Assembly (NCBI RefSeq): GCF_001194135.2
Contig: NC_068996.1
Location: forward strand, 54,301,242-54,365,241
Direction of reading: 5' to 3'
Source of the DNA: Octopus bimaculoides
Lineage: Eukaryota
Length of the DNA: 64,000 nucleotides
Below the pieces are notes generated by a model. The model was not told where the DNA came from. It saw nothing but the letters and a program-made list of their open reading frames with translations, and ran no database searches. A program made the position numbers and the translations under genes. Shown here piece after piece: positions 17,058 to 17,087 of the stretch (position 1 is its first letter; each line of letters opens with the position of its first letter).

Positions 17058-17087
17058 GTACAAAAATGTATCCGGGTAAAACCGTAG
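17058..17087 (+). CDS. Candidate 30-nt phase 1-1 microexon of eag, (G)TKMYPGKTV(G)
   Basis: Acceptor ctttctttctcgtag|G and donor AG|gtaggt. Only the phase-1 reading is stop-free, matching the phase-1 start of exon 43750. No homology support. Confidence 0.4.
   Translation, partial: VQKCIRVKP

What the first reader, a model, noticed from the sequence alone, without database searches (positions are those of the whole stretch)
17058..17087. Candidate 30-nt microexon in the eag N-terminal cytoplasmic linker
Seen: in non-repetitive intron sequence, ctttctttctcgtag|GTACAAAAATGTATCCGGGTAAAACCGTAG|gtaggt. Phase 0 and phase 2 readings hit stops; only phase 1 is open, and the next recognised exon (43750) starts in phase 1, giving GTKMYPGKTVGLSKFARLARS. 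Established: this is the linker between the PAS domain and S1, and neural microexons are common in channel genes. Inference: an alternative 10-aa insert. The acceptor is also an AG|GT junction, so it could instead be a recursive-splice site in this long intron.
Basis: partly seen in the sequence, partly recalled or inferred. Interest (0 to 1): 0.7.

Follow-up and report, generated by a model that had tools for sequence, protein, structure and literature searches.

The report
Unproven 30-nt candidate exon in eag
A 30-base stretch deep inside a very long intron of an EAG potassium-channel gene looks like a small in-frame exon. No transcript or cross-species evidence could be reached, so it is slightly more likely a chance look-alike than a real alternative exon.

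Summary
Window 17058-17087 is a 30-nt stretch bounded by a strong acceptor and a strong donor. It is open only in phase 1, the phase required by the next EAG exon (43750-43874). If spliced in, it adds TKMYPGKTVG at the position of G147 of KCNH1, four residues before the N-terminal calmodulin site (151-165).

Whether this exceeds chance depends on the scoring:
- With position weight matrices it is the only such pair in the ≥43.7-kb intron, on either strand. A pair this good appears in 0.7% of shuffles, and about 0.045 are expected from the real site counts.
- With a cruder consensus count, about one such pair is expected by chance.
- The frame property alone has p≈0.2.

No orthologous intron, transcript or protein carrying the insert could be reached in any collection. 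Nothing is published on cephalopod EAG isoforms.

The recursive-splice reading is disfavoured. The regenerated donor G|GTACAA is weak (at most 4.7 bits, against 8.9 for the downstream donor). The signature of eMIC-type neural microexons is also not met.

One point raises the prior: Drosophila eag is alternatively spliced at exactly this junction (−2 aa and +7 aa isoforms).

My odds: chance pseudo-exon, unused or used only at noise level, 0.55; real cassette microexon, 0.33; recursive-splicing exon, 0.07. Junction reads from neural RNA-seq would settle it.

The parts
1..43749 (+). Part of the intron that precedes EAG exon A. It is at least 43.7 kb long, its 5' end lies outside the window, and it contains nine N gaps.
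   Evidence: No EAG coding match upstream of 43749 by tblastn. N runs listed.
17041..17042 (+). An upstream AG with only 13 nt between it and the candidate acceptor AG. It shortens the AG-exclusion zone. Used as an acceptor, it would give a 45-nt exon that is also open in frame, but it scores -3.5 bits.
17043..17057 (+). Candidate 3' splice site: an 11-nt pyrimidine run CTTTCTTTCTC, then G, then TAG.
   Evidence: PWM score 11.8 bits, among the 4 best acceptors in the intron. Sequence.
17058..17087 (+). Candidate 30-nt cassette exon. In phase 1 it reads (G)TKMYPGKTV(G).
   Evidence: No transcript evidence is available.
17088..17093 (+). Candidate 5' splice site TAG|GTAGGT.
   Evidence: PWM score 8.9 bits, 7 of 9 consensus matches, stronger than the donors of real exons A (7.2) and B (8.1).
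17053..17060 (+). First copy of the 8-nt direct repeat CGTAGGTA. It spans the acceptor junction.
   Evidence: the repeat finder family D7. Probably chance: other repeats of 9 nt occur in the same 800 nt.
17083..17090 (+). Second copy of CGTAGGTA. It spans the donor junction.
43750..43874 (+). EAG exon A (phase 1 in, phase 0 out). It encodes GLSKFARLARSVTRNRSTLLQFSSNLPNTKFEDGNRTSHLAN, the N-linker with the N-terminal calmodulin site.
   Evidence: tblastn. Aligns to KCNH1 from residue 147 in 5K7L. The acceptor junction ag|GTTTGAGCAAATT is shared with a distant relative, L001.
49363..49758 (+). EAG exon B, covering the pre-S1 segment to S3 ([22 protein letters not shown]...).
   Evidence: tblastn E = 7e-60. 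Borders read. KCNH1 structures match at E = 1e-73.

Best explanation
The stretch is most likely a chance pseudo-exon: a good acceptor and a good donor that happen to lie 30 nt apart, in a compatible frame, inside a very long AT-rich intron of an EAG (Kv10-type) potassium-channel gene. It is probably not included in mature mRNA, or only at noise level, and then has no function of its own.

Shown:
- The sequence, its frame and the strength of both sites.
- The identity of the host gene and the exact place in the protein where an insert would fall.

Inferred: that it is not used. This rests on base rates. Long introns hold many splice-site pairs as good as those of real exons, and most are never spliced. 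It also rests on the lack of any supporting signal beyond site strength.
For: - The same intron strand holds 9 AG...GT pairs of 300 nt or less whose two sites score at least as well as real exon A, for example 14037-14234 at 11.0 and 11.1 bits. All of them except the candidate carry stops in the required frame, so strong pseudo-exons are demonstrably present here.
- Under a PWM-free definition about 1 frame-compatible pair of 60 nt or less is expected by chance, and 1 is seen.
- The frame property alone has p = 0.20.
- The AG-exclusion zone is 13 nt, against 42 and 52 nt for the two real exons. The only consensus-like branch site (TTAAT, A at -36) lies upstream of an intervening AG.
- The features reported for eMIC-dependent neural microexons are absent. 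Those are a weak 3' splice site, a long AG-exclusion zone, UGC near the 3' splice site and CUAAY (PMC8797185 section 10, compared).
- No protein in 5.8 billion clusters or 1.84 billion representatives matches the insert. All 23 representative-library hits start at exon A.
Against: - With PWM scoring the pair is unique in 87 kb of sequence (both strands of the intron). It is rare in shuffles (0.7%), and about 0.045 are expected from real counts.
- Both sites outscore those of real exon A.
- The frame is preserved, and the flanking Gly codon is regenerated on both sides.
- The host is a neuronal channel gene. Drosophila eag is alternatively spliced at exactly this junction (bioRxiv 10.1101/215293).
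- The absence of matching proteins means little, because the collections hold no cephalopod EAG transcript at all, with or without the insert.
Confidence: 0.55

Rival explanations
1. It is a real alternative cassette microexon, probably neural. Inclusion inserts ten residues (TKMYPGKTVG) between the end of the PAS domain and the N-terminal calmodulin-binding helix of the EAG channel. This lengthens the tether by which the calmodulin N-lobe couples to the PAS domain, and so could alter Ca2+/calmodulin inhibition or PAS-CNBHD coupling.
For: - Strong acceptor (11.8 bits) and donor (8.9 bits); the only such pair in the intron; 0.7% of shuffles.
- The length is a multiple of 3 and the stretch is open only in the required phase.
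- The insertion point is G147 of KCNH1, four residues before BD-N at 151-165 (PMC2877719 abstract). The N-linker binds the calmodulin N-lobe in the rEAG structure (PMC7515569).
- Fly eag has -2 aa (PE) and +7 aa (PF) isoforms at this same junction, DTKG|GLSKFAKL.
- Another species, P0156, carries extra residues at the same spot: DDAEANAAPA|GMSKFARL.
- The donor-competition rule predicts inclusion once the exon is recognised, because the downstream donor is the stronger one (PMC8605326).
Against: - There is no transcript or conservation evidence of any kind.
- The cruder scoring gives a chance expectation of about 1.
- The AG-exclusion zone is short and there is no UGC or CUAAY signature.
- The insert bears no resemblance to the fly insert, which decodes as SFAVNLFLP.
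- The fly variants did not change Ca2+ sensitivity in HEK cells, so a functional effect is not assured even if the exon is real.
Confidence: 0.33
2. It is a recursive-splicing intermediate. The acceptor at 17057/17058 is used to remove the first part of the long intron. The 30-nt RS-exon is defined by its downstream donor, and is then removed by re-splicing from the regenerated donor at its 5' end, leaving no trace in mRNA.
For: - The intron is very long, at least 43.7 kb.
- The acceptor is directly followed by GT.
- A short exon-like unit with a downstream donor matches the RS-exon architecture described in PMC8605326.
Against: - The regenerated donor would be xxG|GTACAA. It scores 2.2 bits in place and 3.8-4.7 bits with AAG or CAG supplied by the upstream exon, against 8.9 bits for the RS-exon donor.
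- Ratchet-point donors are normally stronger than the RS-exon donor, and weakening them switches the outcome to full inclusion (PMC8605326).
- Cryptic RS-exons are generally out of frame (same paper), whereas this one is in frame.
Confidence: 0.07

Closest known systems
Drosophila eag isoforms PE and PF: alternative splicing at the N-terminal calmodulin-binding site (bioRxiv 10.1101/215293, citing FlyBase)
   Same: Same gene family and the same exon junction. The fly primers decode to ...DSEDTKG|GLSKFAKLA... and the window reads ...G|LSKFARLA.... The fly variants are small in-frame changes, -2 aa and +7 aa, directly before or inside the amphipathic calmodulin helix.
   Different: The fly variation is annotated and has been expressed; this one is only predicted. 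The paper does not say how the fly variants arise (alternative splice sites or a cassette exon). The inserted residues are unrelated (SFAVNLFLP against TKMYPGKTV). In HEK cells the fly variants showed no significant change in Ca2+ sensitivity.
Neural cassette microexons, including the eMIC/Srrm234-dependent programme (PMC8797185)
   Same: Length (30 nt), frame preservation, location in a neuronal ion-channel gene and within a long intron. Fly eMIC exons are enriched in ion channels.
   Different: The reported cis signature is not present. That signature is a very weak 3' splice site, a long AG-exclusion zone, UGC close to the 3' splice site and a strong CUAAY branch site. Here the 3' splice site is strong, the exclusion zone is 13 nt, the nearest TGC is at -35 and there is no CTAAY.
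Recursive splice sites and RS-exons, for example the Ubx m1/m2 microexons and intronic ratchet points (PMC8605326)
   Same: A long intron, an acceptor immediately followed by GT, and a short exon unit with its own donor.
   Different: The regenerated donor is weak (at most 4.7 bits) and the downstream donor is strong (8.9 bits), the reverse of a ratchet point. The unit is in frame, unlike typical cryptic RS-exons.
Intronic pseudo-exons (splice-site pairs in long introns that are not spliced; established knowledge, from my own memory)
   Same: Good site scores with no other support. Several equally strong pairs occur in the same intron.
   Different: Among those pairs, this is the only one that preserves the reading frame, and it has the best acceptor.

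Membership tests
EAG (Kv10, KCNH1/5-type) channel gene, as host | The exons encode the N-linker and S1-S3 with close similarity to KCNH1. | tested here: met
   The exon A + B translation matches KCNH1 structures 8EOW, 6PBX and 5K7L at E about 1e-73 over residues 147-316. tblastn gives E = 7e-60.
Cassette microexon | A short exon (about 51 nt or less) bounded by a usable acceptor and donor. | tested here: met
   30 nt, with PWM scores of 11.8 and 8.9 bits, at or above the two real exons. This tests the sequence only, not use.
Cassette microexon | Keeps the reading frame between its neighbour exons. | tested here: met
   The length is a multiple of 3 and the stretch is open in phase 1, the phase of exon A. 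The upstream exon's phase is inferred, because that exon is outside the window.
Cassette microexon | Found in transcripts (junction reads or cDNA). | not testable with these tools
   No RNA-seq access. No protein with the insert in 5.8 billion clusters or 1.84 billion representatives, but these also hold no cephalopod EAG transcript of any kind.
Cassette microexon | The exon and its splice sites are conserved in related species. | tested here: inconclusive
   The closest relative found, L024, is only about 1.1 kb around exon B, at 82% nucleotide identity. L022 and L023 cover 3.4-5 kb of the orthologous intron and hold no insert-like sequence. The distant compact ortholog stops about 320 nt or less upstream of exon A. 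Two pattern scans of metagenome contigs gave 0 hits and 1 chance bacterial hit.
eMIC/Srrm234-dependent neural microexon | Very weak 3' splice site, long AG-exclusion zone, UGC close to the 3' splice site, UCUC-rich tract and a strong CUAAY branch site (PMC8797185). | tested here: not met
   Strong 3' splice site (11.8 bits), a 13-nt exclusion zone, nearest TGC at -35, a single TCTC and no CTAAY.
Recursive splice site (ratchet point) | A strong acceptor directly joined to a strong donor. | tested here: not met
   The acceptor is strong. The donor part, GTACAA, scores 2.2 bits in place and at most 4.7 bits in the best case.
Recursive splice site (ratchet point) | The regenerated donor outcompetes the RS-exon donor, so the RS-exon is skipped. 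| tested here: not met
   At most 4.7 bits against 8.9 bits. Rule from PMC8605326.
Recursive splice site (ratchet point) | Lies in a long intron. | tested here: met
   The intron is at least 43.7 kb.
Recursive splice site (ratchet point) | Sawtooth read pattern, lariats or a splicing intermediate in nascent RNA. | not testable with these tools
   No RNA data.
Alternative splicing at the EAG N-terminal calmodulin-site junction (fly PE/PF type) | The variation falls at the exon junction directly before GLSKFA(K/R)LA. | tested here: met
   Fly primers decode to DTKG|GLSKFAKL. The window's exon A starts G|LSKFARLA. This is met for position only; use remains unproven.

The most novel reading that the evidence does not exclude
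The 30 nt are a lineage-specific neural microexon. It lengthens, by ten residues, the tether between the PAS domain and the N-terminal calmodulin helix of an EAG channel. It arose independently at the very junction that flies also splice alternatively. That would mark the junction as a recurrent evolutionary hot spot for tuning Ca2+/calmodulin control of EAG channels.
Probability: 0.3. Interest if true: 0.45.

Novelty: new member of a known kind. Interest (0 to 1): 0.3.

Why it matters
If the exon is real, it would be a second, independent case of small in-frame splice variation directly before the N-terminal calmodulin site of an EAG channel; the first is in Drosophila. It would give a natural pair of isoforms for asking how the length of the PAS-to-calmodulin-helix tether affects Ca2+/calmodulin inhibition. 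It would also add to the sparse catalogue of microexons outside vertebrates and insects.

If it is a chance pseudo-exon, as I judge slightly more likely, it has no importance beyond being a good example of how convincing such look-alikes can be in very long introns.

Tried and rejected
1. Proteins carrying the insert.
- The word-indexed search with insert + exon A returned only P0001, a genomic read-through from a distant compact-intron relative.
- The exhaustive HMMER search gave 23 hits, and none reaches the insert.

2. The same locus in other assemblies.
- Exact look-ups of the three window ORFs (17066-17395, 43692-43985, 49363-49788) found none on record.
- A homology search with the 109-aa read-through ORF over the candidate gave nothing.

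3. Orthologous introns.
- P0001-cluster contigs (L001-L021) all end about 180-320 nt upstream of exon A, in most cases at a (CT)n run. Cluster members of odd length are also genomic, not spliced.
- L022 and L023 cover 3.4-5 kb upstream of exon A, with no PAS exon and no insert-like sequence. L024 covers only exon B.

4. Degenerate DNA pattern scans of metagenome contigs. The first gave 0 hits. The looser one gave 1 hit inside a 733-aa GC-rich bacterial ORF, rejected as chance.

5. Structured RNA. There are no Rfam hits in the window and no unusual fold, so this reading is rejected.

6. Repeat or transposon origin. The site is unique in the window and outside the dispersed repeat family, so this reading is rejected.

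7. The CGTAGGTA direct repeat as a duplication scar. There is no similarity beyond the 8 nt, and comparable short repeats are common nearby, so I treat it as chance.

8. Literature. Nothing on KCNH microexons, cephalopod EAG isoforms or cephalopod recursive splicing. The supplements of the 2026 octopus splicing preprint are not held.

9. Taxon.

Full report
**What is in the sequence**

Window 17058-17087 reads GTACAAAAATGTATCCGGGTAAAACCGTAG. It is preceded by an 11-nt pyrimidine run and TAG (ctttctttctcgTAG) and followed by GTAGGT.

**The host gene**

- A tblastn probe found two exons on the + strand.
  - Exon A is 43750-43874 and encodes GLSKFARLARSVTRNRSTLLQFSSNLPNTKFEDGNRTSHLAN. It enters in phase 1 and leaves in phase 0.
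  - Exon B is 49363-49758 and encodes [22 protein letters not shown]... through S1-S3.
- Their joined translation matches solved KCNH1 structures at E about 1e-73. Exon A's first residue aligns to G147 in 5K7L.
- No PAS-domain exon is detectable in 1-43749. The intron is therefore at least 43.7 kb long, and the partner exon lies outside the window or in one of the nine N gaps upstream of exon A (eleven in the whole window).
- The exon A acceptor junction ag|GTTTGAGCAAATT is shared with a distant relative (L001), which fixes that boundary.

**Where an insert would fall**

- The hEAG1 N-terminal calmodulin site BD-N is residues 151-165 (PMC2877719 abstract).
- Inclusion of the 30 nt would regenerate the junction glycine and add ten residues four positions before BD-N.

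**Is the pair more than chance?**

*Position-weight-matrix scoring.* I used generic splice-site matrices with frequencies from memory, scored against the window's base composition.
- The candidate scores 11.8 bits (acceptor) and 8.9 bits (donor). Real exon A scores 9.7 and 7.2; real exon B scores 12.8 and 8.1.
- At the candidate's thresholds the intron holds 4 acceptors and 41 donors on the sense strand. The candidate is the only pair of 300 nt or less on either strand.
- Dinucleotide shuffles gave a frame-compatible pair of 60 nt or less in 2 of 300 trials. About 0.045 are expected from the real counts.

*Weakest-real-exon thresholds.* At exon A's own scores, the sense strand holds 9 pairs of 300 nt or less, for example 14037-14234 at 11.0 and 11.1 bits. 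Only the candidate is a multiple of 3 and open.

*PWM-free rule.* The rule asks for at least 11 of 13 pyrimidines before a YAG, and a donor matching at least 7 of 9 consensus positions. It gives 31 acceptors and 113 donors. About 1 frame-compatible pair of 60 nt or less is expected, and 1 is observed.

*Frame alone.* The frame property has p = 0.20 on its own.

So the case is suggestive under one scoring and null under another.

**Local splicing features**

- Only 13 nt separate the candidate's AG from the previous AG (17041-17042). The two real exons have 42 and 52 nt.
- The only yUnAy site within reach (TTAAT, A at -36) lies upstream of that AG. A near-consensus A-run at -20 to -22 could serve as a branch point instead; that is inference.
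- The nearest TGC is at -35. There is one TCTC, no CTAAY and no TGCATG.
- PMC8797185 (section 10) describes eMIC-dependent microexons as having very weak 3' splice sites, long AG-exclusion zones, UGC near the 3' splice site, UCUC-rich tracts and strong CUAAY branch sites. That signature is not met here. This does not exclude other kinds of microexon.
- Both junctions lie in an 8-nt direct repeat, CGTAGGTA. There is no similarity beyond it, so I treat it as chance.

**The recursive-splice reading**

- PMC8605326 describes ratchet points as an acceptor directly followed by a donor, plus a cryptic RS-exon of about 50 nt.
- The regenerated donor is generally the stronger of the two donors, and cryptic RS-exons are generally out of frame. 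Weakening the regenerated donor switches the outcome to full inclusion.
- Here the regenerated donor would be G|GTACAA. It scores 2.2 bits in place and 3.8-4.7 bits with an ideal upstream exon end. The downstream donor scores 8.9 bits, and the unit is in frame.
- If the acceptor is recognised at all, the expected outcome is inclusion, not silent re-splicing.

**Comparative and transcript evidence**

I could not obtain any.
- The insert + exon A query found one cluster in 5.8 billion: P0001, a genomic read-through from a relative with introns of about 90 bp. Its contigs end at most about 320 nt upstream of exon A, in most cases at a (CT)n run. Its odd-length cluster members are also genomic.
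- Exact look-ups of three window ORFs found nothing. The read-through ORF over the candidate has no homolog.
- The exon B search found a closest relative at 96% amino-acid but only 82% nucleotide identity, on 1.1-kb contigs (L024-L027). It also found more distant relatives on long contigs.
- L022 and L023 show exon A 6.5 kb and 5 kb upstream of exon B. They have no PAS exon and no insert-like peptide in the 3.4-5 kb of intron that could be fetched.
- Two degenerate pattern scans of metagenome contigs gave nothing and one chance hit inside a bacterial ORF.
- An exhaustive HMMER search of 1.84 billion representatives gave 23 hits, all starting at query residues 9-12, where exon A begins.
- These negatives carry little weight. 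The collections hold no cephalopod EAG transcript at all, so the ordinary isoform is missing too.

**A relevant precedent**

[quoted passage not shown] Isoform PE has a 2-aa deletion and PF has 7 extra residues. Neither changed Ca2+ sensitivity significantly in HEK cells.
- The paper's cloning primers decode to DSEDTKG|GLSKFAKL, the same junction as the window's G|LSKFARLA. For the long form the insert reads SFAVNLFLP in the GLSKF frame.
- Spliced arthropod ORFs show the plain junction: DDSKG|GLSKFAKLA and EESAK|GLSKFARLA. One species carries extra residues there: DDAEANAAPA|GMSKFARLA.
- Small in-frame variation at this position is therefore a known phenomenon, which raises the prior for the octopus-type candidate.

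**Weighing**

- I take a prior of 2-10% that this intron holds a real microexon, raised by the fly precedent.
- I take about 30% as the chance that a real one would score this well.
- The chance expectation is about 0.045 under the favourable scoring.
- Together these give a posterior of roughly 0.12-0.4. The cruder scoring pulls it lower.
- My odds: chance pseudo-exon 0.55, real cassette microexon 0.33, recursive RS-exon 0.07, other 0.05.

**Verdict**

The recursive alternative is disfavoured. If real, it is a new member of a known kind: small alternative exons at the EAG N-terminal calmodulin-site junction. Interest is modest.

Noticed in passing
window 14037-14234, 14552-14609, 33666-33684 (+ strand): Other AG...GT pairs in the same intron have both sites scoring as well as real exon A, for example 14037-14234 at 198 nt with 11.0 and 11.1 bits. 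All carry stop codons in the required frame. They could be plain pseudo-exons or poison exons.
   Followed up: partly
window 7034-7415, 2122-2517, 60974-61143 (+); 53360-53453, 23693-23958 (-); 8026-8169: A dispersed repeat family of about 400 bp has at least five copies in the window at 68-84% identity. It looks SINE-like, but ARAGORN finds no tRNA-like part. None of the copies overlaps the candidate.
   Followed up: partly
window 63184-63456 (-); also 224-1521 (-) and 62974-63835 (-): Reverse-transcriptase-like ORF fragments occur at both ends of the window. Only one gives a Pfam match, and it is weak: RVT_1 at E = 9e-4, below the curated cut-off. They are probably decayed retroelements.
   Followed up: partly
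window 4378-5192, 10466-10544, 19205-19214, 20036-20269, 23461-23567, 26653-26745, 27935-28656, 37353-37398, 41282-41428, 44707-45201, 61528-61837: The window has eleven runs of N, which are assembly gaps. Nine lie in the intron upstream of exon A, so a short exon could be hidden there.
   Followed up: no
window 7440-7900, 10280-10700, 16312-16409, 32528-32668, 40611-40709: A shared 4-nt-period microsatellite recurs in several places in both orientations at 72-100% identity. TA, CA and CT repeats are also common.
   Followed up: no
L001-L021 (Logan contigs), compared with window 43750-49758: A distant relative has the same EAG exons separated by introns of about 90 bp, against 5.5 kb between exons A and B in the window. 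The first 24 residues of exon A are identical. This is a striking difference in intron size for one gene.
   Followed up: partly
P0137 (1003 aa, from the representative library): This EAG gene model has its domains in scrambled order: S4-S5, then S2-S3, then the N-linker, then S1, then PAS. It is probably a mis-assembled or mis-predicted gene in its source.
   Followed up: no
bioRxiv 10.1101/215293, primer R14: As printed, the primer for the fly PF isoform is one base short of joining the upstream frame (EDTKG) to the downstream frame (GLSKF). This is probably a typing slip in the preprint.
   Followed up: partly
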